From NCBI RefSeq assembly GCF_902459465.1, contig NC_047074.1, positions 2,480,001-2,544,000 on the forward strand: a DNA stretch of 64,000 nucleotides, read 5' to 3'. The DNA comes from Asterias rubens. Lineage: Eukaryota. The notes under the pieces are model-generated. The model was not told where the DNA came from. It saw only the letters and a list, made by a program, of their open reading frames with translations, and did not search any database. How positions within the stretch are numbered: position 1 is the first letter of the stretch; every line of letters starts with the position of its first letter. The translations under genes and the position numbers were made by a program. Below, piece after piece: positions 29,025 through 42,100 of the stretch.

Positions 29025-30407
29025 TTACTCCATTTCGAAAGCACGCACTTCAGTTACTTTAGGTGCCTCTTTTTTGACAAACAAGCGTTTGATCCGTCTC
29101 ATCAAGTAGTCAATAAACTCCACGGCGGTGATAATACTTGCGCCGAGAAACAGCCCGAGCTGCCCGCCCAGCTCTCCCAGCAGCGCAGTGAAGGGCAGAT
29201 CCTCTACTTGCTTGTAGGTGGTGGTGCTCAACTCGTTGTAGTACACGTCCAGATACACTAAACTTCTGGCGGTGTATTCTTCATCGTAGAGCGATGCGTT
29301 CTCTCGGCTTGCGTAAAAACCAACGGAACTTTGAAGGACACTTTTGCTTGGATACCTCGCCATAGATATCGTGGGTTCGTAGGTGAAGTAGTCACAAGAT
29401 ACGGGGCAGTCACATATGTCTTCCGCCATCTTAGCACGATGGAGCTCCAATGCCTTCTTGGTGCATGGTAGCTGTGTGATATTACACAGAGGTACTCCGT
29501 CCGCTTGGAGAGTCCCAAAAAGCTGACAAGAGCAGTTGTCGGTGATAGCAAAAGCTTGACAGTCAGACAGACAGGTGAGCCTGTTATAATTTGTGGGGTC
29601 TTGTTGATAAGCTTTGTTGATACCGCAAACTCCCCACGGTTTGTGGAGGTTCTGATGATGTGTCTGGCGTATGGACACAAAGGTATGAAACCCAGGGGGT
29701 GCTGATAGCCCCGTGGTGTCCATTTCAGGAGACTCAGTGCGAGGATGGATTGCAAATTTGATTCCTGCTTCGGTGTTGCCTTGTTCAGTCTCGGTGTATT
29801 CGTTCTCCTCAATGTCCAGAACCAACTGAAGCCCGTTCCCGATCCCCGGTAGGGTTTGGTTGCCGCGGGAGGTAAATGTGTAACACAGTCCGTAACTCGG
29901 CGAGTAGAATTCTGTGAAGTTTTCTACACCACATTTCGCTCCTTTCCATTTGCACGTATGCATTGATCTTTCCAATGAGTAGCCAGTTGCATAAGCAAAT
30001 TCTGCGTAGTTAAACGAATCATCCGAATAGAAGTCGTCCCAATCATCCACCGAATCTTCGTCGTCCCCCTCAAAATCGTCATAAACTCTTATGAGGTTTT
30101 TTACGTGCTTTTTGTCCTTTTCCTGAATTTTAGAACTCATGAACCGGTTGTAGTTACAAACGGTCACGGCGGGAAAGTCGAGTTTCGGCACGAAATTGAC
30201 AATAACACTGGTGCTTGCTTCGAATCTAATAAACGCCCTGATGCGATCGAACGTAACGGCCGCGTAAATCCCACCAAGCGCGAGTAGGACGATCACCCAA
30301 GGGGCTTTACCCCGGACACCACGTCTCTCGGCTACACGACTTATCCCATGAAGTGTCGTAGTTGTTGCAAACTCAAACTCCAAACTAGCTGGTTTTGGAT
30401 CTTCCAT
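29025..30407 (-). CDS. Intronless DEG/ENaC subunit (copy B, 460 aa)
   Basis: Same motifs as copy A, with an intact TTTTLHGI; shorter C-terminal tail. Confidence 0.95.
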   Translation of the reverse strand: MEDPKPASLEFEFATTTTLHGISRVAERRGVRGKAPWVIVLLALGGIYAAVTFDRIRAFIRFEASTSVIVNFVPKLDFPAVTVCNYNRFMSSKIQEKDKKHVKNLIRVYDDFEGDDEDSVDDWDDFYSDDSFNYAEFAYATGYSLERSMHTCKWKGAKCGVENFTEFYSPSYGLCYTFTSRGNQTLPGIGNGLQLVLDIEENEYTETEQGNTEAGIKFAIHPRTESPEMDTTGLSAPPGFHTFVSIRQTHHQNLHKPWGVCGINKAYQQDPTNYNRLTCLSDCQAFAITDNCSCQLFGTLQADGVPLCNITQLPCTKKALELHRAKMAEDICDCPVSCDYFTYEPTISMARYPSKSVLQSSVGFYASRENASLYDEEYTARSLVYLDVYYNELSTTTYKQVEDLPFTALLGELGGQLGLFLGASIITAVEFIDYLMRRIKRLFVKKEAPKVTEVRAFEME

Positions 30408-32609
30408 TTCCGGGCTGAAATGCTCGTTTTTGTCTGCCTTTGTGACTTGCTGCTGAATCGGAAATCGACTGCCTGAGGATTGGTAAACTAAGCCGTCAAC
30501 AAACCGTCACTCAGGACGATCTTGTCTCTGCAAAAGTTAAATGGCAACTGAACAGTACGCTAAATCGATGGTTAGTTTTAACAATATAGTCTTTTCTCTA
30601 TAGTTTTAACGAGCGGCTCGTTAAAGCTTTGCTGGCAGTGGATCGTAATCCTTGCTCTTTAACCGTGACTTGGTGCGCTGTCACTCATGGACTGATTTTA
30701 AATATGCATGTGTATTGGTAGATATTAACCAATTAGCGGATCGACCTTCTGTGGGCTTTTACTCTTTGTTGTCTTCTGATTAATTTATAGTTAAATTGAG
30801 GGAAAGTGTTCATTTATTTAGCTGCTTCAATATTATACATCCTTAGAAAAACGATTATGAAAGTTGAACAGGGACTGTTGAGAAATTACAAGAACTATTC
30901 AAAGTAGTATAGAAACTATCCAAAGATGTGTACAACCAGAATTCTGCCAATAAAGGAAATTTGTAAACAAATTGATAAAATTGATTTGCACACACAACAT
31001 ATTTTTTAAATTTAGGCCTACACGTCTGAAAATAACCGTTAGAATTTTTAAGGTTAGAAAGTTTCTACAGATGAAGTACCTTTCTTGCCGGGCCGGGGTA
31101 CCATGAAATCCTCAAGGGTCACTCTACGCCATTATGGCGTGTGTGGGTAATAATTTTGGGTGTTTTTTTTGTTTTGTTACATGTTTTTTTTCTACTGTTA
31201 TGTTACTTGTTATCACCGCATGTGTAATGACATGAGACAGGGAGTTTTTAAAAGGGATTTTTTGAAAAATATTTACATTATCTGTAAATTTTTCACAAAG
31301 TCTGTGAGCGAGCCTAGTGCAACTAATGAAGCATTCTTAATTCTGTGTGGTGATGACAGCTTTTTGTGCTATAAATAAAATATGTTCACTGGGAATACTG
31401 TATTAGTTACAGGCGGGTGGCCGTTAAGCTAACGATAATTATAGTGAAATGGGTAAAAGCAGTGACCGTGAGAGTGCAAACGACGAACGCGGGGTCTTAA
31501 GTGCCATTTTAACTCCCCTTGGCCCATTTTCATAAAGCCTCTTATAAGCACAACTAAACACGGAATAAGATTGCTTAGCAGAATCAGGTAACCAGCCCAA
31601 TTGCATTTAGCATTACACATTAACTTTCTAAACAGTAACACCTTGTCTGCAAGTAAACGGGGACCCCTGCCACACCGGCGCGCCGCAGATTCACGTCGGG
31701 GGCTCCTGCCGAAAATGGCTAATAGAAATCCATTGTAAATGACTCGCAAACCTGTCGCACGCTATTTATGACTAGAGCATTACTTGGTCCATGGTTAGTG
31801 AAACCATTGGATGCTCAAATGGATGAAACAATAAGTAGGCCTGAATATACCCGTAGTGCAGAATTATCACCAGTTTAGCCAATTGATAGGGCCACTGACC
31901 ATCAGGGACTAACATCACTAAGAAAACAAACTCGCTCATTTTAACAGGTCCCAATGTTTTGAGAATACGTGCAAGACTCCCACACTACAGTTCTGAGACC
32001 CTTTGCGTAAACTCAGTGTTACACACCAAGAGCAGTTCTCGTCCAATTATCTGCCTCTTTTTGCCCAAGTGAGGGCGCAGTTTGAGATTGTGACGTTATG
32101 TCATGTACAAAACGTCCTGCAAGATATTATGAAACCGACAGAACGTTTTAATTTCAACGAGCATGATGCCGCCAAAGTCTTAGTCATTTGGACGTCTGCT
32201 ACAACAGTAAACAACGCTTTATTGCTCTACTGTGGGTCATTACTGTGTACTTAATTGTTTACCTATTGGTAAAATAAAGTATAGTGTCTTAAAACGTTTG
32301 GTCTTTGTATTGCTCCATGGTAATTAATGGAAGCGCCAGGGTTGCATTTTGGTCCAGCCCTCGCTCAAAAGAGTAATAACTAATTTGTTGTTGGACGATT
32401 CACTAATTGATAACCTTGCATTAAGCTTTTACCACCCACTTGCTTGTTAAAACTGACAGACGATAGTGCGCACTTTTCAGTTGGCGTTTAACTTGTAAAG
32501 AGTCAAGTTCGTGCTGATATTAAGAGTGATGGTTTGTTGACGGCTAAGTTGCCAAACCTTAAGCAGTCGTACTATTTTGAAGAATCAGGAATCAGGATAT
32601 CAACAGACT

Positions 32610-35600: not shown

Positions 35601-36193
35601 AGCTAACCACTGATTTCACAGTGATTAGAATAAGTATTGTCGTCTAGTAAGGCTCAAGATCTTTTCTTCCACAGTAAAACAAAAAACGCCCCTGGTATCC
35701 CACACAGTGTCTTTAAAACTGGGTGTACTTGCCCAGCTTCAAGCTCTTCCCTTTTGGGCCATTGTTGTCGATTCCACAACCACAGCTCCCCTCCTGGATC
35801 CAAACAATATTAGTGGAAGAAAAGATCTCACGCCTTACCGATTTACCATTTCTTGATTTGTGCAATTCATAATCAAAGACAATGTACAGAGGTGAAAGGC
35901 AGAGACAGAAGCCAATTAGGGAACTTTTTACTGCCCTGACGGTAACCTTGCTATTTGGCTAGGTATTATAAGGGAACTTAGAACTTCTTGAAATTTTTTG
36001 ACAGAATTTCGGATGCAGTATACAACATTTGTTTTATGCAACTACACCACTGTTATAAAATCCTTTACTTCATCTGAAGAGTAAAAAGGTCAAATCTTGT
36101 GGCCATTTGTGGCTGCTATGGGCATTATTGTTCAAGACGCTTGTGGTCTCTAACAGGTTTTAAAGTATCTGCAACCAGTGTTTGGTAAAAGCT

Positions 36194-39100
36194 CTAGCTA
36201 CTAGCAACTCTAAGTTGATTTTGTAAATCTCGTTTTTGTTGTTGTAATGATATCAGCTTGTGTTTATTCCTTTCTAATCTGGTCTCCATACACTGCATAA
36301 GCGGCCCACTGAGAACGTCCATTAGATGACATAGGGATTTGGTATACACTGTAAAAAATACACACCGAAAAAATACCATTATAAGCACAAAGAGAAATGC
36401 CAAAGCTTTAAAACAGCCTGGAATTACAAATAGGCCACAGAGGCCAATGGGATTAGCCTCTGTTGCCCCTGGTCTTGGCCTTGGAACGCCTTCAAAAGTT
36501 TTCAATAGCAGGCCTCGAGACAACCCATTGCACCCCCAGCAATAGACCCTTCCAAAGAAATACGTAAATTGCACATAGCGCGTGCGCACTAACGTTTTGG
36601 TTGGCAAAATGAGGGAGTATCGCGCTGTTTTGTACACTGCTAATTGGTGCGTGACGCAGACGCGATTGCGCGTCTGCTTAGTGCACAACTATATGGCGTT
36701 TGCCAACCAACAGGGTCTGTATGCATGCGTGAATGTTATTAGCAAAGGTCATGGGAAGGGTCCATTGCCACAGTGTCCTGTGGTTTTGCTGCTGTGGAGC
36801 CCCTTTGCAAATTGTCATAAATTTACATTATGGCCATTACCAGAGGAAAACTGCCATGCACCTTCAATCAAGGGTGAAGTTCAAGGCTTGCTGCAATAGA
36901 CTTTAAGGTTTTCCAATGGAAGTACAACGGTTATTTTTATGGTGCAATTAAGTGCATGTATAACCATGTAGGCTAGGACTGGAAATGGTCGTAAACTTAA
37001 ATTCTTTTAGCAATAACTGGTGGATGGAGTCGATGAGTATCTTTAAACCAAAAAAAAGCAACTTTATTGGGAGATGGTTGTAAAAACAGCTAAACCCAAA
37101 TGGGGAATCTACAAATCCGTTGGTTAATGTCCATAAAACGCGCTTTCTATAGCCCTTTTACTGAGTCGAGTTTCAGCACTCTTTAATATTGCATAGCTAT
37201 ATACCAGATAGATGGGTTACCATTTGTTATTGGATCTTGTTGGGAAGGCCTAAATATTTGTGAAAGTACACATAGAATAAAGAATCAACGCTAGCATAAC
37301 CAAGATGTTCATTAAATTATTCTAGATAGATGGGTATAGCTATACTAGATAGATGGGTTACCATTTGGTATTGGATCTTGTTGGGAAGGCCTAAATATTT
37401 GTGAAAGTACACATAGAATAAAGAATCAACGCTAGCATAACCAAGATGTTCATTAAATTATTCTTTCATTTGCTGTGAGCCAATAAACAGGTAGTGTTAA
37501 AGGCATGGACACCTTTGGTAATATTGTCAAAGACCAGTCATCTAACTTGGTGTATCTCAACATTTGCATAAAATAACAGACCTGTGAAAATTTGAGCTCA
37601 ATTGATCATCGAAGTTCAACACCTCAGATTCAAATATTTGAGTTAGAGATTACTTCTTTCTAAAAAACAATATTTCTGAGGGAGCCATTTCTCACAATGT
37701 TAACTATCACCAGCTCTCCATTGCTCGATCGATACCAAGTAAGTTTTTATGCTGGCAATTATTTTGAGTAATAACCAACAGTGTCCAGTGCCTTTAATAC
37801 AAGTTGTAGACTTACCCGCGCCGTTGTGTACTGTTGTCAGTAAGTCTTCTCCCCCTGTATTTAGAACAGCCTTGTTGTATGCTTCCTGCTCCTCCTGGGA
37901 TAAGATTTTCGGCAGCTCTGCCAGTGCATCTAAGCAAGCTGTACTTATTGTGTCTTTGGGTACGATGAAGAGTGGGATTTCCAATCGGTCGTAACTGTCA
38001 AAGTAAATAAAAATTTCCAAGAATTACAGTACCACTGTTCCTGAAATAAATTGGTGCCCGATATTGGGCAAGGTGGTACCCCCATCTATTGTGTCTTCGT
38101 TGTGTGCTTTGGAACCGCATGAATGGTTTAGAGGGTTTTAGTTGGGAGTGGGGTACTTCTGTACAAGAGGAAACATAGTGTATTAAAGTATGGGAACAAT
38201 CGGGTACCCTATGCCCCCATAGAGGAGGGCATGGTACCATGTGATGTGTTGTGGCTGAGCATTTAATTAAGACTAGAGCAGAGTGATGTTCCAAGTCCTA
38301 TTCCTGACACTTGTGTCCATGAGCAAGGTACTTTACCATTTTGGTTTGTCCTTGCGATGGGACAGTAAGCCAAAGGTGTTGCGTAGCTAGGATTGGTATA
38401 GTACGTAAACATTCCCAGAACATTTGTGCTGTGGAAGAGTAGGGGTTAACCGAAGGTGTTTATGGTTCACATAGCAACTTGCTCCCTTGTTTACAGGGGT
38501 TTGTCTGTTTGTTCAGATGATCTTTCCAACAAGGGAACTCTACAATGGCTGTTGGCTGCATCAACACCGTTATCAAATGAAAGCCTTTTCAGTGATCCAG
38601 ATTGGACTGTCAATTCAGACATGACCAAGCATTGCCAAGAAACAAAGATGTACAATAGTCTTGTGCAAATTTCCAAACCCTGCTAAACACACAACTTTGC
38701 AAAGTAGAAACAGGCTACAAGACAAACTACAAGGCTTGTCCATTTGTAGGGCAGTTTTTCTCAATAACCTTACTTTGGGGGTTCTCCTTCAGGGCTCTGG
38801 TTGGTCGATTGAAAACATGTGACTTGCACCTGACCAGCATGTGTTTCTTTCTCTTCGTTGAAGCAGGAAAAGATGAGACCAATGAAGCCGTCGTCAAGGA
38901 ACTGATATGAAGCTTGGGTTCGTACGTCTAGGTTCAATGTAAGAAAGGAACAACATCATTGGTTATGAATATTCATTAAAACATTGCTGTCACTATGAAA
39001 GAAACTTTTTGGGTTATTAATATTCATTGCTTACAATGAAACAGAAACTTGTTTGTTATGAATATTCATTAAAACTTTGCTGACAATGAAGAAACTTGTT

Positions 39101-41710
39101 GGTTATGAATATTCATTAAAACATTGCTGACACTATGAAAGAAACTTTGGGGATTATGAGTATTCATTACTTACAATGAGAAAGAAACTTGTTGGTTATG
39201 AATATTCATTAAAACATTGCTGACACTATGAAAGAAACTTTGGGGATTATGAGTATTCATTACTTACAATGAGAAAGAAACTTGTTGGTTATGAATATTC
39301 ATTTAATCAAAACAGCTTTATGAAATTGGGCCCAACTGGGTAACTTGATGAATATGTTTAAATGAACTGTGATGTCAAGTGTTGTAAAGGCCTGTGACTT
39401 TGCATGGAATTATGAACTCTAAACCCGTTACTGCAGTAACTCAGGCCTGTTACTTCATGGAGGCAACAAAGGCAATTTTTGTCAATGCCTCGGTCATCGC
39501 ATTAGTGCCCTTGAAACACTCCACTAGAATTTTACAATTTCCTCCGTGCGGGGTGCCCTTTAACAAGGAGAAAATCCCTTGGTGACCCTTGCCCTCTCAA
39601 AATGATGCATGCAGGCCCGGTAACTGGTTGAGAGTTAATAATTCAATACAGCCAGGAGCCTGCTTTGACCATGACGGTGAGTCCCCTTTGAGCTTACCAA
39701 CATGTGAAGGCCACACAGTGATGTGAGGATGAGAGTGGTACCAGCCTATTACCCTCAAGGGACGCTTCATTAACGTTGCTAAGCTGTGCCGTTAATCATT
39801 AAGGAGAATTTATCTACTGACCTTCATAAGCTACATCTACATTGTAAAGCACCGCCTCTATAAACTTGGACAAATTACCATCAGAAGTGAAATGCACTGT
39901 TGCACTTTTTCACATCAATAATTAATGTAATGGTGGAAATACAATAAGTAAGGATTATTTGCTTTGACCATGATGGTGAGTCCCCTTTGAGCTTACCAAC
40001 ATGTGAAGGCCACACAGTGATGTGAGGATGAGAGTGGTACCAGCCTATTACCCTCAAGGGACGCTTCATTAACGTTGCTAAGCTGTGCCGTTAATCATTA
40101 AGGAGAATTTATCTACTGACCTTCATAAGCTACATCTACATTGTAAAGCACCGCCTCTATAGACTTGGACAAATTACCATCAGAAGTGAAATGCACTGTT
40201 CACATCAATAATTAATGTAATGGTGGAAATACAATAAGTAAGGATTATTTGCAGTATCAACATGGGGTTTAAAAATCTCTCTAAGGATTATGGTTGTTTC
40301 CTATGGAACTAGTGGATTCGAATTGTCAGGTTGCAGTAGTGGTATCTTCCCTAGCCTTCCACGTCTGTTCAATCGGTTTAAAGTGAAGTCCAAAGACCCA
40401 CACCATTCGGTGAGGCAAGAATTAAACTGTTACACTCTGATTATGGTGATATGCCTGATCCCATGTAAAGCAATAATCAGTATTGGCAACACTTAAACTC
40501 TGATTATGGTGATTTGCCTGATCCTACATGTATGTACAGCATAATCATAATCAGTTAACACTGCAGTCCTCAGAGCAACACCAACAGTTACCGAACACCA
40601 AAACTCTTTGACTCTAATAAGGTGCCTGATCCTATCTAAAGTATAATCAGTAACTAGGCCAACTGGGAGTCAAACAAACGAAACATGCTGTTAGATTTTA
40701 GTGTAGGGTTTTTAAGGATATTTCCGCCTCGGAAGCTGCCATTGAGAGTTGCTCCGGAGAGATTTCCACACGGTCCTTGCTCTTATCTGATCTTCGTAGC
40801 ATGATGACGGACATGATATGCACAGCTCGGTTTGTGTCAATCTAAAAATAAAAAAAGTACCATCACAAAATAAGATCTGGAATTACACAAAGCCCATAAA
40901 CCATTTTGAGGTATGGCGATAACACGGTAAGTTATAGGTTTGGGTTAAATTTGTCTGTATGTTTTTACACGCAAACCCAACAGTGTATTCCTACAGTGTC
41001 AACCATATCTCAAAAAGGCTAATGGCCAGGCCTCGTGCGTCTTCAAAAGCTTCCCATAGACTTTAATATTTCCCAATGGAAGTGCTCTTTGCAAAATAAA
41101 AAATTGCCTTGCCCTCTCAAAGATAAAATTCCAGGCCTGCAACATTCTTATTTTTGAGGTAGTAGAAATTTTGCCGGCACTAGCTATTTTTCAGTGTAAC
41201 ATTAGAAAGCTGGAATGTCACTGAACAGCGACTGTTTTGGGGGGACTTTCAGGCCTGATACTTCACGGAGGCAACGGAGGCGATTGCCTCCGTTGCCCCT
41301 TGCCATTGCCTTGGTGCCCTTGAAATGCTCCAGTAGAAATTTAAAATTTGCTCATAGGGTGCCCTTTGCCAAAGAGAAATTGCCTCGGTGCCCTTGCCCT
41401 TTCAAAAACGAAGCATACAGCCCTGGACTTTATACACCAGGATGAATGTTAGTCTCGTTTTGCAGCAACATTGTCTTCGTTACTTTGTCGTTATCTTTTA
41501 CAATGGCAAAATAACAAATAATAATAACAATATTGGTCAACACTCGCCCAAGCGTGAAAAAAAATTAAGGCATTAATCAAGTATTAGGCATGGATACCAA
41601 CTAACCTCTCCAATACAAAGTCCCATGATCTCTTCTCTCTCCGTTGATAAAGCATGAGTTAGGCAGACCATGTAGGCATCAGCCGCTAAATAAACACATG
41701 ATGCTGTCAT
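36194..41710 (-). CDS. BRCC3: Lys-63-specific deubiquitinase BRCC36
   Basis: Exons 41606-41710, 40722-40841, exon 3 (39997-40084 or its duplicate 39698-39785), 38774-38927, 37816-37994, 36194-36348. MVCLTHALSTEREEIMGLCIGE, RRSDK.KDRVEISPEQL, GWYHSHPHITVWPSHVD and ELPKIL.QEEQ.AY match BRCC36. Confidence 0.95.
37195..37465. repeat. Local tandem duplication of ~135 bp in a BRCC3 intron
   Basis: AGATAGATGGGTTACCATTTG...GATGTTCATTAAATTATTCT occurs twice, nearly identical. Confidence 0.9.
37498..37700. mobile_element. Internally deleted MITE family A copy
   Basis: TTAAAGGCATGGACACCTTTGGTAAT start; lacks the far terminus. Confidence 0.7.
38965..39305. repeat. ~50-60 bp minisatellite in a BRCC3 intron
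   Basis: Tandem GAAAGAAACTTGTTGGTTATGAATATTCATTAAAACATTGCTGACACTAT-like units. Confidence 0.85.
39662..40250. repeat. Tandem ~299-bp duplication carrying the whole of BRCC3 exon 3
   Basis: 39662-39960 and 39961-40250 differ only by two substitutions and a 9-bp indel, all intronic. Confidence 0.95.
40085..40721 (-). other. U12-type AT-AC intron of BRCC3
   Basis: Donor GAA|ATATCCTT (40721-40714), branch site TTCTCCTTAAT (40107-40097), acceptor GGCAC|AGC. The spliced product EAESLATLMKRPLRV is colinear with BRCC36 EAERLAELTGRPMRV. Confidence 0.9.
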
Positions 41711-41992
41711 CGCTGTACGACGTCTTTTTTAATAAATACTTAGTTAGTTAGTGATCTACTCTGAGCCCAAGCCTATAAAATAATAAAACAAACGGGACAC
41801 GAGGCTGTCAATAATTTGGGAATTTAACAATTATGTTTACTTGGTCTAAGGAATAGGAAAGCCTTAGTTTTTTTTTAGTTGTTTTTTTTTTTTTTTTTTT
41901 TTTTAAATTAAAAAATAATTTTTGTTAAAAAAATCAATTTAGAAATTGGTCTTACACCGTCACTAGATAAAAAATTTAAAAATAAGTTTCTG

Positions 41993-42100
41993 TATGGCGC
42001 CACCACTTTTTCATTCGATATCAAACAATATAGTAGTTAATTTACCTCAATCAATGAGATATCCCTTTTTGTAAAAATCAGTGAAAAAGTGGTGGCGCCA
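41993..42100. mobile_element. Small MITE between the BRCC3 and COMMD2 start codons
   Basis: TGGCGCCACCACTTTTTCA ... TGAAAAAGTGGTGGCGCCA; decayed relative at ~15375-15500. Confidence 0.75.

What the first reader, a model, noticed from the sequence alone, without database searches (positions are those of the whole stretch)
39662..40250. Duplicated BRCC3 catalytic exon forced into mutual exclusion by U12/U2 spliceosome incompatibility
Seen: the 88-nt exon encoding the JAMM motif (SLATLMKRPLRVIGWYHSHPHITVWPSHV-D) is present twice, at 39997-40084 and 39698-39785, with identical coding sequence. Each copy has a U12 branch site (TTCTCCTTAAT) with an AC acceptor upstream and a U2 GTAAGC donor downstream. 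The 211-nt spacer between the copies would be a GT...AC hybrid intron. Established: such hybrids are generally not spliced, and this is a recognised route to mutually exclusive exons (JNK genes). Inference: the single AT donor at 40721 picks either copy and the other is skipped, so the duplication is tolerated even though 88 nt is not a multiple of 3. If the U2 machinery used the cryptic CAG 2 nt into the second copy, the join reads GCT TAG, an immediate stop. This may be a newborn mutually exclusive exon pair before divergence. Caveat: two SNPs and a 9-bp indel are also what two alleles look like, so a false duplication is possible.
Basis: partly seen in the sequence, partly recalled or inferred. 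Interest (0 to 1): 0.8.

Follow-up and report, generated by a model that had tools for sequence, protein, structure and literature searches.

The report
Young duplicated BRCC3 exon in starfish
In the common starfish a 0.3-kb piece of the BRCC3 deubiquitinase gene holding its catalytic exon has recently been copied in tandem, and the gene still makes a normal message, most likely because the exon's rare U12-type entry signal and ordinary exit signal cannot be spliced to each other.

Summary
The window is Asterias rubens (assembly eAstRub1.3) and holds a minus-strand BRCC3/BRCC36 gene. A 290/299-nt tandem duplication, with GCA microhomology at its ends, copies the 88-nt JAMM exon. Each copy keeps the U12 branch site, the AC acceptor and the U2 GTAAGC donor.

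The duplication looks real rather than two alleles laid end to end.
- In a DNA run the unit contig has about 2.5 times the flank depth, and contigs break at the unit edges.
- An independent marine metagenome gives a 329-nt contig, one unit plus a 30-nt wrap over the copy-to-copy junction.
- Asterias amurensis and Acanthaster planci have one copy with the same AT-AC intron, so the duplication arose in the A. rubens lineage.
- Copy B keeps the ancestral state at all three differences.

Two RNA runs give an mRNA contig with the exon once, coding a 266-aa protein identical to the annotated one. Every double-inclusion route gives an early stop.

The splice-site incompatibility logic, a mirror image of the JNK exon 6a/6b case, is sound but inferred. 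The exons are identical, so which copy is used cannot be read from mRNA, and no isoform diversity results. This is a young, probably neutral member of a known kind, of modest interest.

The parts
36194..41773 (-). BRCC3/BRCC36 gene of Asterias rubens. The exons, as laid by an mRNA contig, are 41773-41606, 40841-40722, 40084-39997 (or 39785-39698), 38927-38774, 37994-37816 and 36348 onward. The CDS runs from 41710 to the stop at 36196-36194 and codes 266 aa.
   Evidence: The RNA contig of run X16 (record 9) lays as six pieces. The spliced translation is 100% identical over 266 aa to P0087, named BRCC36-like [Asterias rubens]. Exon 2 matches PDB BRCC36 chains.
39960..40249 (-). Duplication unit, copy A (upstream in the gene), 290 nt: 165 nt of intron 2, the 88-nt exon and 37 nt of intron 3. 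The GCA at 40252-40250 is the microhomology shared with both unit ends.
   Evidence: Copy A carries the derived state at all three differences relative to A. amurensis.
39661..39959 (-). Duplication unit, copy B (downstream), 299 nt. It keeps the ancestral 9 bp (about 39901-39909), T at 39863 and G at 39675 (minus-strand letters).
40713..40721 (-). U12-type AT donor /ATATCCTTA at the end of exon 2. It is the only U12 donor in the gene.
   Evidence: It is conserved in A. amurensis, A. planci and Anneissia japonica.
40085..40107 (-). U12 branch site TTCTCCTTAAT followed by 12 nt that end in AC: the acceptor of exon copy A. There is no polypyrimidine tract.
   Evidence: The sequence is identical in A. 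amurensis.
39997..40084 (-). JAMM exon copy A (88 nt, SLATLMKRPLRVIGWYHSHPHITVWPSHV plus the first base of the Asp codon).
39786..39996 (-). 211-nt spacer: a hybrid 'intron' with the U2 donor GTAAGC at its 5' end and the U12 branch site plus AC at its 3' end. It contains the copy-to-copy junction at 39960|39959.
   Evidence: The metagenome contig X4 record 19 runs over the junction.
39786..39808 (-). U12 branch site and AC acceptor of exon copy B.
39698..39785 (-). JAMM exon copy B, identical to copy A.
   Evidence: A==B True.
39692..39697 (-). U2 donor GTAAGC of copy B. The twin donor of copy A is at 39991-39996. Either donor must pair with the AG acceptor in front of exon 4 (38928).

Best explanation
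A recent tandem duplication arose in the Asterias rubens lineage, with breakpoints sharing a 3-nt GCA microhomology. It copied 290-299 nt of the BRCC3 gene: the tail of the ancient U12-type AT-AC intron, the 88-nt catalytic exon and the first 37 nt of the next U2 intron. The duplication is a real feature of the genome, seen in the reference data and in an unrelated marine sample, and it is younger than the split from A. amurensis. The gene still yields one normal mRNA. The inferred reason is as follows. The single AT donor of exon 2 can pair only with a U12 branch site/AC acceptor, that of copy A or of copy B. The GT donor behind whichever copy is chosen can pair only with a U2-type AG acceptor, and the first good one is at exon 4. 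The 211-nt GT...AC spacer belongs to neither spliceosome, so the two copies cannot be joined. Both routes give the same 266-aa protein. The duplication is therefore near neutral and creates no isoform. It is the raw starting state from which a JNK-like mutually exclusive pair could evolve, not a working regulated pair. Shown: the duplication, its reality, its lineage, the splice signals and single inclusion in mRNA. Inferred: that incompatibility is what prevents double inclusion, and that either acceptor can be used.
For: Structure.

Reality of the duplication:
- In DNA run X1 the unit contig (record 5, 39676-39962) has word depth 421, against 154-183 for seven flank contigs.
- X1 contigs stop exactly 30 nt (k-1) inside the unit at 40223 and at the copy-specific SNP 39675/39705, as expected for a repeat node.
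- Marine metagenome X4 gives a 329-nt contig (record 19). It is one unit plus a 30-nt wrap across 39960|39959, at depth 11.9 against 2.6-9.7 for the flanks.

Lineage:
- A. amurensis (GCA_032118995.1, HiFi assembly, PMC10625585) has one unit, and both window copies map to that single unit.
- A. planci has one unit.
- The outgroup shares the copy-B state at all three differences.

Splicing:
- mRNA contigs of X16 and X5 hold the exon once, and E2 joins to it at the AT-AC borders.
- All other introns are GT-AG.
- Hybrid splicing, spacer retention, the cryptic CAG and skipping of both copies all give premature stops.
- No AG in the spacer has a good pyrimidine tract (at most 12 of 20).
- The spacer is far longer than the ~50 nt at which steric hindrance could block double inclusion, which leaves incompatibility as the obvious barrier.

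Literature:
- The BRCC3 U12 intron is conserved between human and Arabidopsis (PMC2831892).
- U2/U12 hybrid introns drive exclusive exon choice in JNK genes (PMC1874599).
- Five such clusters are known in human (PMC5740500).
Against: - Only assembler contigs (Logan), not raw reads, could be laid, and these drop rare forms.
- X1 may be the very specimen the assembly came from, so its depth excess is not independent of the individual. It is, however, independent of the long-read assembly process.
- The X1 junction contig was not among the pieces listed. Its presence is inferred only from unexplained depth in bin 39920-40110.
- The X4 contig has 27-30 letters beyond the junction, one short of the tool's own 31-letter bridging rule.
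- The depth ratio of 2.5 is higher than the 2.0 expected, and this is not explained. A third copy on one haplotype is possible.
- Nothing shows that acceptor B, or A, is ever used, or that double-inclusion or retention transcripts are absent before NMD.
- RNA run X5 shows an unbroken contig from the upstream flank into the first unit, so that animal may carry a single copy.
Confidence: 0.7

Rival explanations
1. Assembly artefact: the animal has one unit per chromosome, and the assembler laid two alleles (or noisy long reads) end to end.
For: The reference is a 2019 long-read assembly. The copies differ by two SNPs and one indel, much as alleles would. One copy is all-ancestral and the other all-derived at those sites, as two alleles could be. 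The junction ORF and the junction 32-mer were not found in the protein collection or in JGI metagenomes. X5 shows no contig break at the unit start.
Against: With two alleles the unit depth would equal the flank depth and the contig would run straight through. Instead the depth is about 2.5 times the flanks, and contigs break at both unit edges in X1. An unrelated metagenome (X4) yields a contig with read-derived sequence across the copy-to-copy junction at about twice its flank depth. The blanks mean little, because those collections hardly sample this species.
Confidence: 0.07
2. The duplication is real, but only one copy is functional in practice. The U12 spliceosome always takes one acceptor, for example the first transcribed or the one nearer exon 4. 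The other copy is just intron sequence, already free to decay.
For: The RNA contig of X5 is contiguous with the upstream flank, so it represents the first copy. It carries two changes in or next to the branch site (plus-strand 40098 T>A turns TCCTTAAT into TCCTTATT, and 40095 T>C), although this 23-nt stretch is identical in both window copies and in A. amurensis. All three differences between the copies are derived in copy A. In X5, intron 2 up to copy A stands at depth 28-51 against 5-7 for the U2 introns. That would fit copy A lying inside a long, slowly removed intron.
Against: In the reference the two copies are identical over the whole exon, the 190 nt before it and the donor, so their intrinsic strength is equal. 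High retention of a U12 intron is expected anyway. It is not known whether the X5 animal has the duplication at all.
Confidence: 0.15
3. The duplication is real and mildly harmful. When both exon copies are defined at once, the spacer is retained (or the cryptic CAG is used). A share of transcripts is then lost to NMD, and the variant is a segregating slightly deleterious polymorphism.
For: Retention adds 299 nt and stops after 37 extra codons. The cryptic CAG gives a stop after one codon. Exon definition across a U12 acceptor and a U2 donor is established knowledge. Copy number looks uneven (2.5x in X1), and X5 may lack the duplication.
Against: The mRNA contigs of two runs show only the single-exon form, though contigs drop rare forms. 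The depth in X1 suggests at least two copies on both haplotypes of that animal, which is not what one expects of a rare harmful allele.
Confidence: 0.08

Closest known systems
JNK/MAPK8-10 exons 6a/6b (mutually exclusive exons enforced by a U2-U12 hybrid intron; Letunic et al. 2002; Chang et al. 2007, PMC1874599)
   Same: Two tandem homologous exons are separated by an intron whose two ends belong to different spliceosomes. The two exons cannot be joined, and exactly one enters the mRNA. The origin is tandem exon duplication next to a U12 intron.
   Different: It is a mirror image. In JNK the hybrid intron has a U12 5' splice site and a U2 3' end; here it has a U2 GT donor and a U12 branch site/AC. 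The JNK exons have diverged, give distinct isoforms and are regulated (Nova, pyrimidine tract). Here the exons are identical, no isoform exists, and the pair is confined to one species and may be polymorphic.
The conserved U12-type intron of BRCC3 (U12DB; orthologous in human and Arabidopsis, PMC2831892)
   Same: The intron before the JAMM exon has /ATATCCTT, a TCCTTAAT branch site 13 nt from the 3' end and a terminal AC. It is kept in A. amurensis and A. planci, and the donor is kept in a crinoid.
   Different: Whether the position is exactly orthologous to the human and plant intron was not tested here. In A. rubens the 3' half of the intron is present twice.
Tandem exon duplications as the source of mutually exclusive exons (human MXE survey, PMC5740500)
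   Same: The exon length is not divisible by three, so joint inclusion is non-functional. This is one of the few clusters where U2/U12 incompatibility applies (5 of about 630 clusters in human).
   Different: Catalogued MXE clusters are old and diverged. This pair differs at no exonic base and at only three intronic sites.

Membership tests
U12-type (AT-AC) intron | 5' splice site consensus /ATATCCTT | tested here: met
   ATATCCTTA lies at 40721-40713, directly after the last codon of exon 2.
U12-type (AT-AC) intron | Branch site TCCTTAAY about 10-15 nt from the 3' end, no polypyrimidine tract, terminal AC | tested here: met
   TTCTCCTTAAT is followed by GATTAACGGCAC in both copies, with the branch A 13 nt from the last intron base.
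U12-type (AT-AC) intron | The intron is actually removed at these borders | tested here: met
   The mRNA contig X16 record 9 joins 40722/40721 to 40084/40083.
U12-type (AT-AC) intron | Conserved in orthologues | tested here: met
   The signals are the same in A. amurensis (identical) and A. planci, and the donor is kept in Anneissia. The literature reports a BRCC3 U12 intron in human and Arabidopsis.
U12-type (AT-AC) intron | Removal depends on U11/U12/U4atac/U6atac snRNPs | not testable with these tools
   This needs a knock-down or an in vitro splicing assay.
Mutually exclusive exons by spliceosome incompatibility (JNK type) | Two adjacent homologous exons from a tandem duplication | tested here: met
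   The duplication is real in DNA.
Mutually exclusive exons by spliceosome incompatibility (JNK type) | The intervening intron has splice sites of two different spliceosomes | tested here: met
   The 211-nt spacer starts GTAAGC and ends with the U12 branch site and AC. This is shown by sequence only.
Mutually exclusive exons by spliceosome incompatibility (JNK type) | Mature transcripts contain exactly one of the two exons | tested here: met
   The mRNA contigs of X16 and X5 hold 88 nt between exons 2 and 4. Rare forms would be dropped by the assembler.
Mutually exclusive exons by spliceosome incompatibility (JNK type) | Both exons are used, in different transcripts | not testable with these tools
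   The exons are identical, so only partly spliced raw reads carrying the intronic markers could tell them apart.
Mutually exclusive exons by spliceosome incompatibility (JNK type) | The choice gives different protein isoforms | tested here: not met
   The two exons are identical and both routes give the same 266-aa protein. It works like the JNK arrangement but is not a functional alternative-exon system.
BRCC36/BRCC3 JAMM deubiquitinase | MPN+/JAMM motif H-x-H-x7-S-x2-D, a BRCC36 C-terminal domain and full-length similarity to BRCC36 | tested here: met
   HSHPHITVWPSHVD spans exons 3 and 4. Exon 2 matches BRCC36 PDB chains at E 3e-14. The annotated gene carries Pfam JAB and BRCC36_C. The protein is 60-88% identical to named BRCC36 proteins.

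The most novel reading that the evidence does not exclude
The block is a copy-number polymorphism (one, two, perhaps three units) segregating in Asterias rubens. It is tolerated only because of U12/U2 incompatibility. The upstream copy is already drifting: it has all three derived changes in the reference and branch-site substitutions in another animal. If so, this catches the first step of either exon-pair divergence or loss, a 'time zero' natural experiment on how mutually exclusive exons are born.
Probability: 0.3. Interest if true: 0.55.

Novelty: new member of a known kind. Interest (0 to 1): 0.35.

Why it matters
Tandem duplication of an exon whose length is not a multiple of three normally wrecks a gene. 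Here the same event seems harmless, because the exon sits between a U12 acceptor and a U2 donor. That gives a concrete, testable example of the long-standing idea that spliceosome incompatibility lets exon duplicates survive long enough to diverge, as in the JNK genes. The example is caught before any divergence, in an animal whose embryos and RNA are easy to obtain. It has no bearing on BRCC3 protein function, and its practical weight is small. It also warns annotators that exons bounded by U12 signals are mis-modelled: the crinoid model reads into the AT-AC intron.

Tried and rejected
1. Exact look-up of the ORF that reads from exon copy A across the junction, and of its copy-B twin, in the 15-billion protein collection: neither is present.
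2. Homology search with the junction ORF, hoping for fragments from other samples: only distant BRCC3 exon fragments were found, the best at 69% identity, so it says nothing about A. rubens.
3. Exact scan of JGI metagenome contigs for a 32-mer across the junction: no match. This is uninformative, because starfish DNA is hardly expected there.
4. Rfam scan of the gene (36000-42000): nothing was found, so there is no known RNA element in the unit.
5. Motif statistics alone: ATATCCTTW sites are not enriched in the window (3 against 2 expected). The case for a U12 intron therefore rests on position, RNA evidence and conservation, not on motif counts.
6. Steric hindrance as the barrier to double inclusion: rejected, because the donor-to-branch-site distance in the spacer is about 190 nt.
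7. An extra paralogous locus as the source of the excess depth: rejected, because only the unit is elevated, bounded exactly by the duplication edges.
8. The crinoid locus as a further outgroup: the JAMM exon falls in an assembly gap.
9. The earlier-findings index held nothing on this locus.
Full report
WHAT IS THERE

Read on the minus strand, window 41773-36194 is a six-exon gene. An mRNA contig from RNA run X16 lays on it as six pieces: 41773-41606, 40841-40722, 40084-39997, 38927-38774, 37994-37816 and 36348 onward.

- The spliced translation is 266 aa. It is 100% identical to P0087, named lys-63-specific deubiquitinase BRCC36-like of Asterias rubens.
- The locus fetched for that protein from GCA_902459465.3 (LR699104.1) is letter for letter window 44710-33194. 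The window is therefore the A. rubens reference assembly.
- Exon 2 alone matches solved BRCC36 chains at E 3e-14.

THE OBSERVATION

- The repeat finder gives two direct copies, 39661-39901 / 39960-40200 (99%) and 39909-39962 / 40199-40252 (100%).
- The alignment shows a 9-bp indel and two substitutions, all intronic.
- I define the unit as aataatcc...ggtcaaagca. Copy A is 40249-39960 (290 nt) and copy B is 39959-39661 (299 nt).
- The trinucleotide GCA stands before copy A and at the end of both copies. This is a 3-nt microhomology of the kind left by replication slippage or end joining.
- Each unit holds the last 165-174 nt of intron 2, the 88-nt exon coding SLATLMKRPLRVIGWYHSHPHITVWPSHV plus one base, and 37 nt of intron 3.
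- The two exons are identical. The spacer is 211 nt, starting GTAAGC and ending ...TTCTCCTTAATGATTAACGGCAC.
- Exon 2 ends at GAA and is followed by ATATCCTTA (40721-40713). All other introns are GT-AG.
- Motif counts alone are not significant. The RNA contig, however, places the exon borders exactly at these signals.

IS THE DUPLICATION REAL?

Only assembler contigs of public runs could be laid, once. Three lines of evidence favour a real duplication.

DNA run X1 (flank depths 154-183).
- The contig covering the unit (39676-39962) has depth 421, about 2.5 times the flanks.
- The upstream contig stops 30 nt inside the unit (40223), which is k-1 for a 31-mer graph.
- The downstream contig stops 30 nt past the copy-specific SNP (39705), and the unit contig starts just after that SNP (39676).
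- This is the signature of a repeat node with two entries and two exits.
- Two alleles of a single unit would instead give flank-level depth and a contig running straight through.

Marine metagenome X4 (a different study).
- It yields a 329-nt contig laid on 39933-40252. That is one unit of 299 nt plus a 30-nt wrap into the start of the next unit.
- It therefore contains read-derived 31-mers across the junction 39960|39959.
- Its depth of 11.9 is about twice that of its flank contigs (2.6-9.7).

Caveats.
- X1 may be the reference animal itself.
- The X1 junction contig was not among the listed pieces.
- The X4 contig has 27-30 letters beyond the junction, just short of the tool's 31-letter rule.
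- The 2.5-fold ratio is above 2 and unexplained. A third unit on one haplotype is possible.

I put the chance that the duplication is real at about 0.9.

AGE AND LINEAGE

The same protein is encoded in GCA_032118995.1, the HiFi assembly of Asterias amurensis (PMC10625585).

- A. amurensis has no 299-nt repeat, and both window copies map to one stretch of it.
- The three-way alignment shows a single unit flanked by the same upstream and downstream sequence. Its exon is identical (88/88), and its branch site and AC are identical.
- Introns are otherwise about 88-93% identical between the two species.
- At all three sites where the copies differ, A. amurensis has the copy-B state: 9 bp present, T and G. 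Copy A therefore carries three derived changes.
- Acanthaster planci also has a single exon, behind a short AT-AC intron (ATATCCTTTG ... TTCCCTTAAT ... AC).
- The crinoid Anneissia keeps the ATATCCTT donor, but its JAMM exon lies in an assembly gap, which I left alone.

The duplication therefore arose in the A. rubens lineage. With two substitutions in about 290 nt, it is no older than ordinary allelic variation in this species.

HOW IT MOST LIKELY WORKS

The BRCC3 U12 intron is ancient, reported as orthologous between human and Arabidopsis (PMC2831892). After the duplication the pre-mRNA carries:
- one U12 donor;
- two identical U12 branch-site/AC acceptors;
- two identical U2 GT donors;
- one U2 AG acceptor, at exon 4.

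By established knowledge of the two spliceosomes, the AT donor can pair only with one of the AC acceptors. Either GT donor can pair only with an AG acceptor. Both legal routes (E2-A-E4 with B inside the U2 intron, or E2-B-E4 with A inside the U12 intron) give the same mRNA, and two RNA runs show the exon once.

I computed the illegal routes.
- Hybrid splicing adds 88 nt and gives a frameshift.
- Retention of the spacer adds 299 nt and gives a stop after 37 extra codons.
- The cryptic CAG two bases into copy B gives HVA followed by a stop.
- Skipping both copies gives a frameshift.

No AG inside the spacer follows a good pyrimidine tract. The donor-to-branch-site distance of about 190 nt rules out steric hindrance as the barrier. 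That leaves incompatibility as the only obvious reason why an 88-nt exon duplication does not destroy the gene. This step is an inference. Nothing here shows which acceptor is used, or how often mis-splicing occurs before NMD.

COMPARISON WITH WHAT IS KNOWN

The closest system is the JNK exon 6a/6b pair. Its intervening intron has a U12 5' splice site and a U2 3' end, and it is held to force exclusive choice (PMC1874599). A human survey found five such clusters (PMC5740500).

The starfish block is the mirror image, with a U2 donor and a U12 acceptor. It meets the structural criteria but fails the functional one, because the exons are identical and no isoforms exist. It works like a JNK-type pair without being an alternative-exon system. 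I file it as a new, very young member of a known kind.

A LEAD NOT RESOLVED

In RNA run X5 the unspliced contig that is contiguous with the upstream flank (40055-40469, depth 51) lacks the 9 bp, as copy A does. It also carries plus-strand 40098 T>A and 40095 T>C. These turn the branch site TCCTTAAT into TCCTTATT, within a stretch that is otherwise invariant between the two copies and A. amurensis.

In the same run, intron 2 stands at 28-51 against 5-7 for the U2 introns. This could be ordinary slow U12 splicing. It could also be a first copy that has lost its branch site and now lies inside a longer intron ending at copy B. Whether that animal has the duplication is unknown, because its contig does not break at the unit start.

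VERDICT

- Observation: confirmed.
- Duplication: real, specific to A. rubens, possibly variable in copy number.
- First reading: the incompatibility logic is sound and consistent with single inclusion, but alternation between the copies is unproven and without consequence for the protein.
- Interest: modest. It is a neat natural starting state for mutually exclusive exon evolution, and cheap to test with raw reads.

Noticed in passing
window 40085-40107 as seen in run X5: An RNA-run contig from another animal carries two substitutions in or beside the U12 branch site of the first exon copy (plus-strand 40098 T>A, 40095 T>C). This stretch is identical in both reference copies and in A. amurensis. 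It may be early decay of a redundant acceptor, or a polymorphism that impairs splicing.
   Followed up: partly
window 40085-40721 (intron 2) in run X5: The unspliced U12 intron stands at contig depth 28-51, while the U2 introns of the same gene stand at 5-7 and the mRNA at 157. This is consistent with slow removal of U12 introns.
   Followed up: no
window 38945-39317, minus-strand intron 3: There are three tandem copies of a 140-nt unit (81-88% identical) just upstream of the exon 4 acceptor. A. amurensis has two copies at the matching place (L003 6150-6404).
   Followed up: no
window 40425-40632, intron 2: A 63-nt tandem repeat is present in 2-3 diverged copies. In A. amurensis the same repeat is expanded to three or more copies at 94-99% identity (L003 4029-4254). 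This offsets the missing 299-nt unit, so the two genes have almost the same length.
   Followed up: no
window 39441-39620 and 41249-41426; also 36482-36863, 37437-37818, 40302-40492: These are interspersed repeat copies inside the BRCC3 introns. The first two are direct copies 73-86% alike, about 1808 nt apart. Word depths in DNA run X1 reach 10^5-10^6 there, so they belong to very abundant repeat families of this genome.
   Followed up: no
window 29028-30506 minus strand (and the neighbouring gene ends seen in L003/L004): An intronless 493-aa ORF lies just downstream of BRCC3. The called neighbouring gene carries Pfam ASC (DEG/ENaC channel). A COMM-domain gene lies upstream on the other strand (L004 1-2290 = window 44710-42421).
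   Followed up: no
L002 (Anneissia japonica, GCA_011630105.1) 12240-13254: The RefSeq BRCC36-like model P0008 reads from exon 2 straight into the ATATCCTT intron (…SEAEISFY…) and lacks the JAMM exon. The exon's expected place is an assembly gap (N run 12435-12951). The gap was not filled.
   Followed up: partly
L001 (ENA metagenome scaffold, sample ERZ23498661): A 778-nt contig from a coastal metagenome encodes BRCC3 exon 5 at 98% identity to the window, read on into the intron. Asteriid DNA therefore turns up in seawater metagenomes, which is why such runs can serve as independent samples.
   Followed up: no
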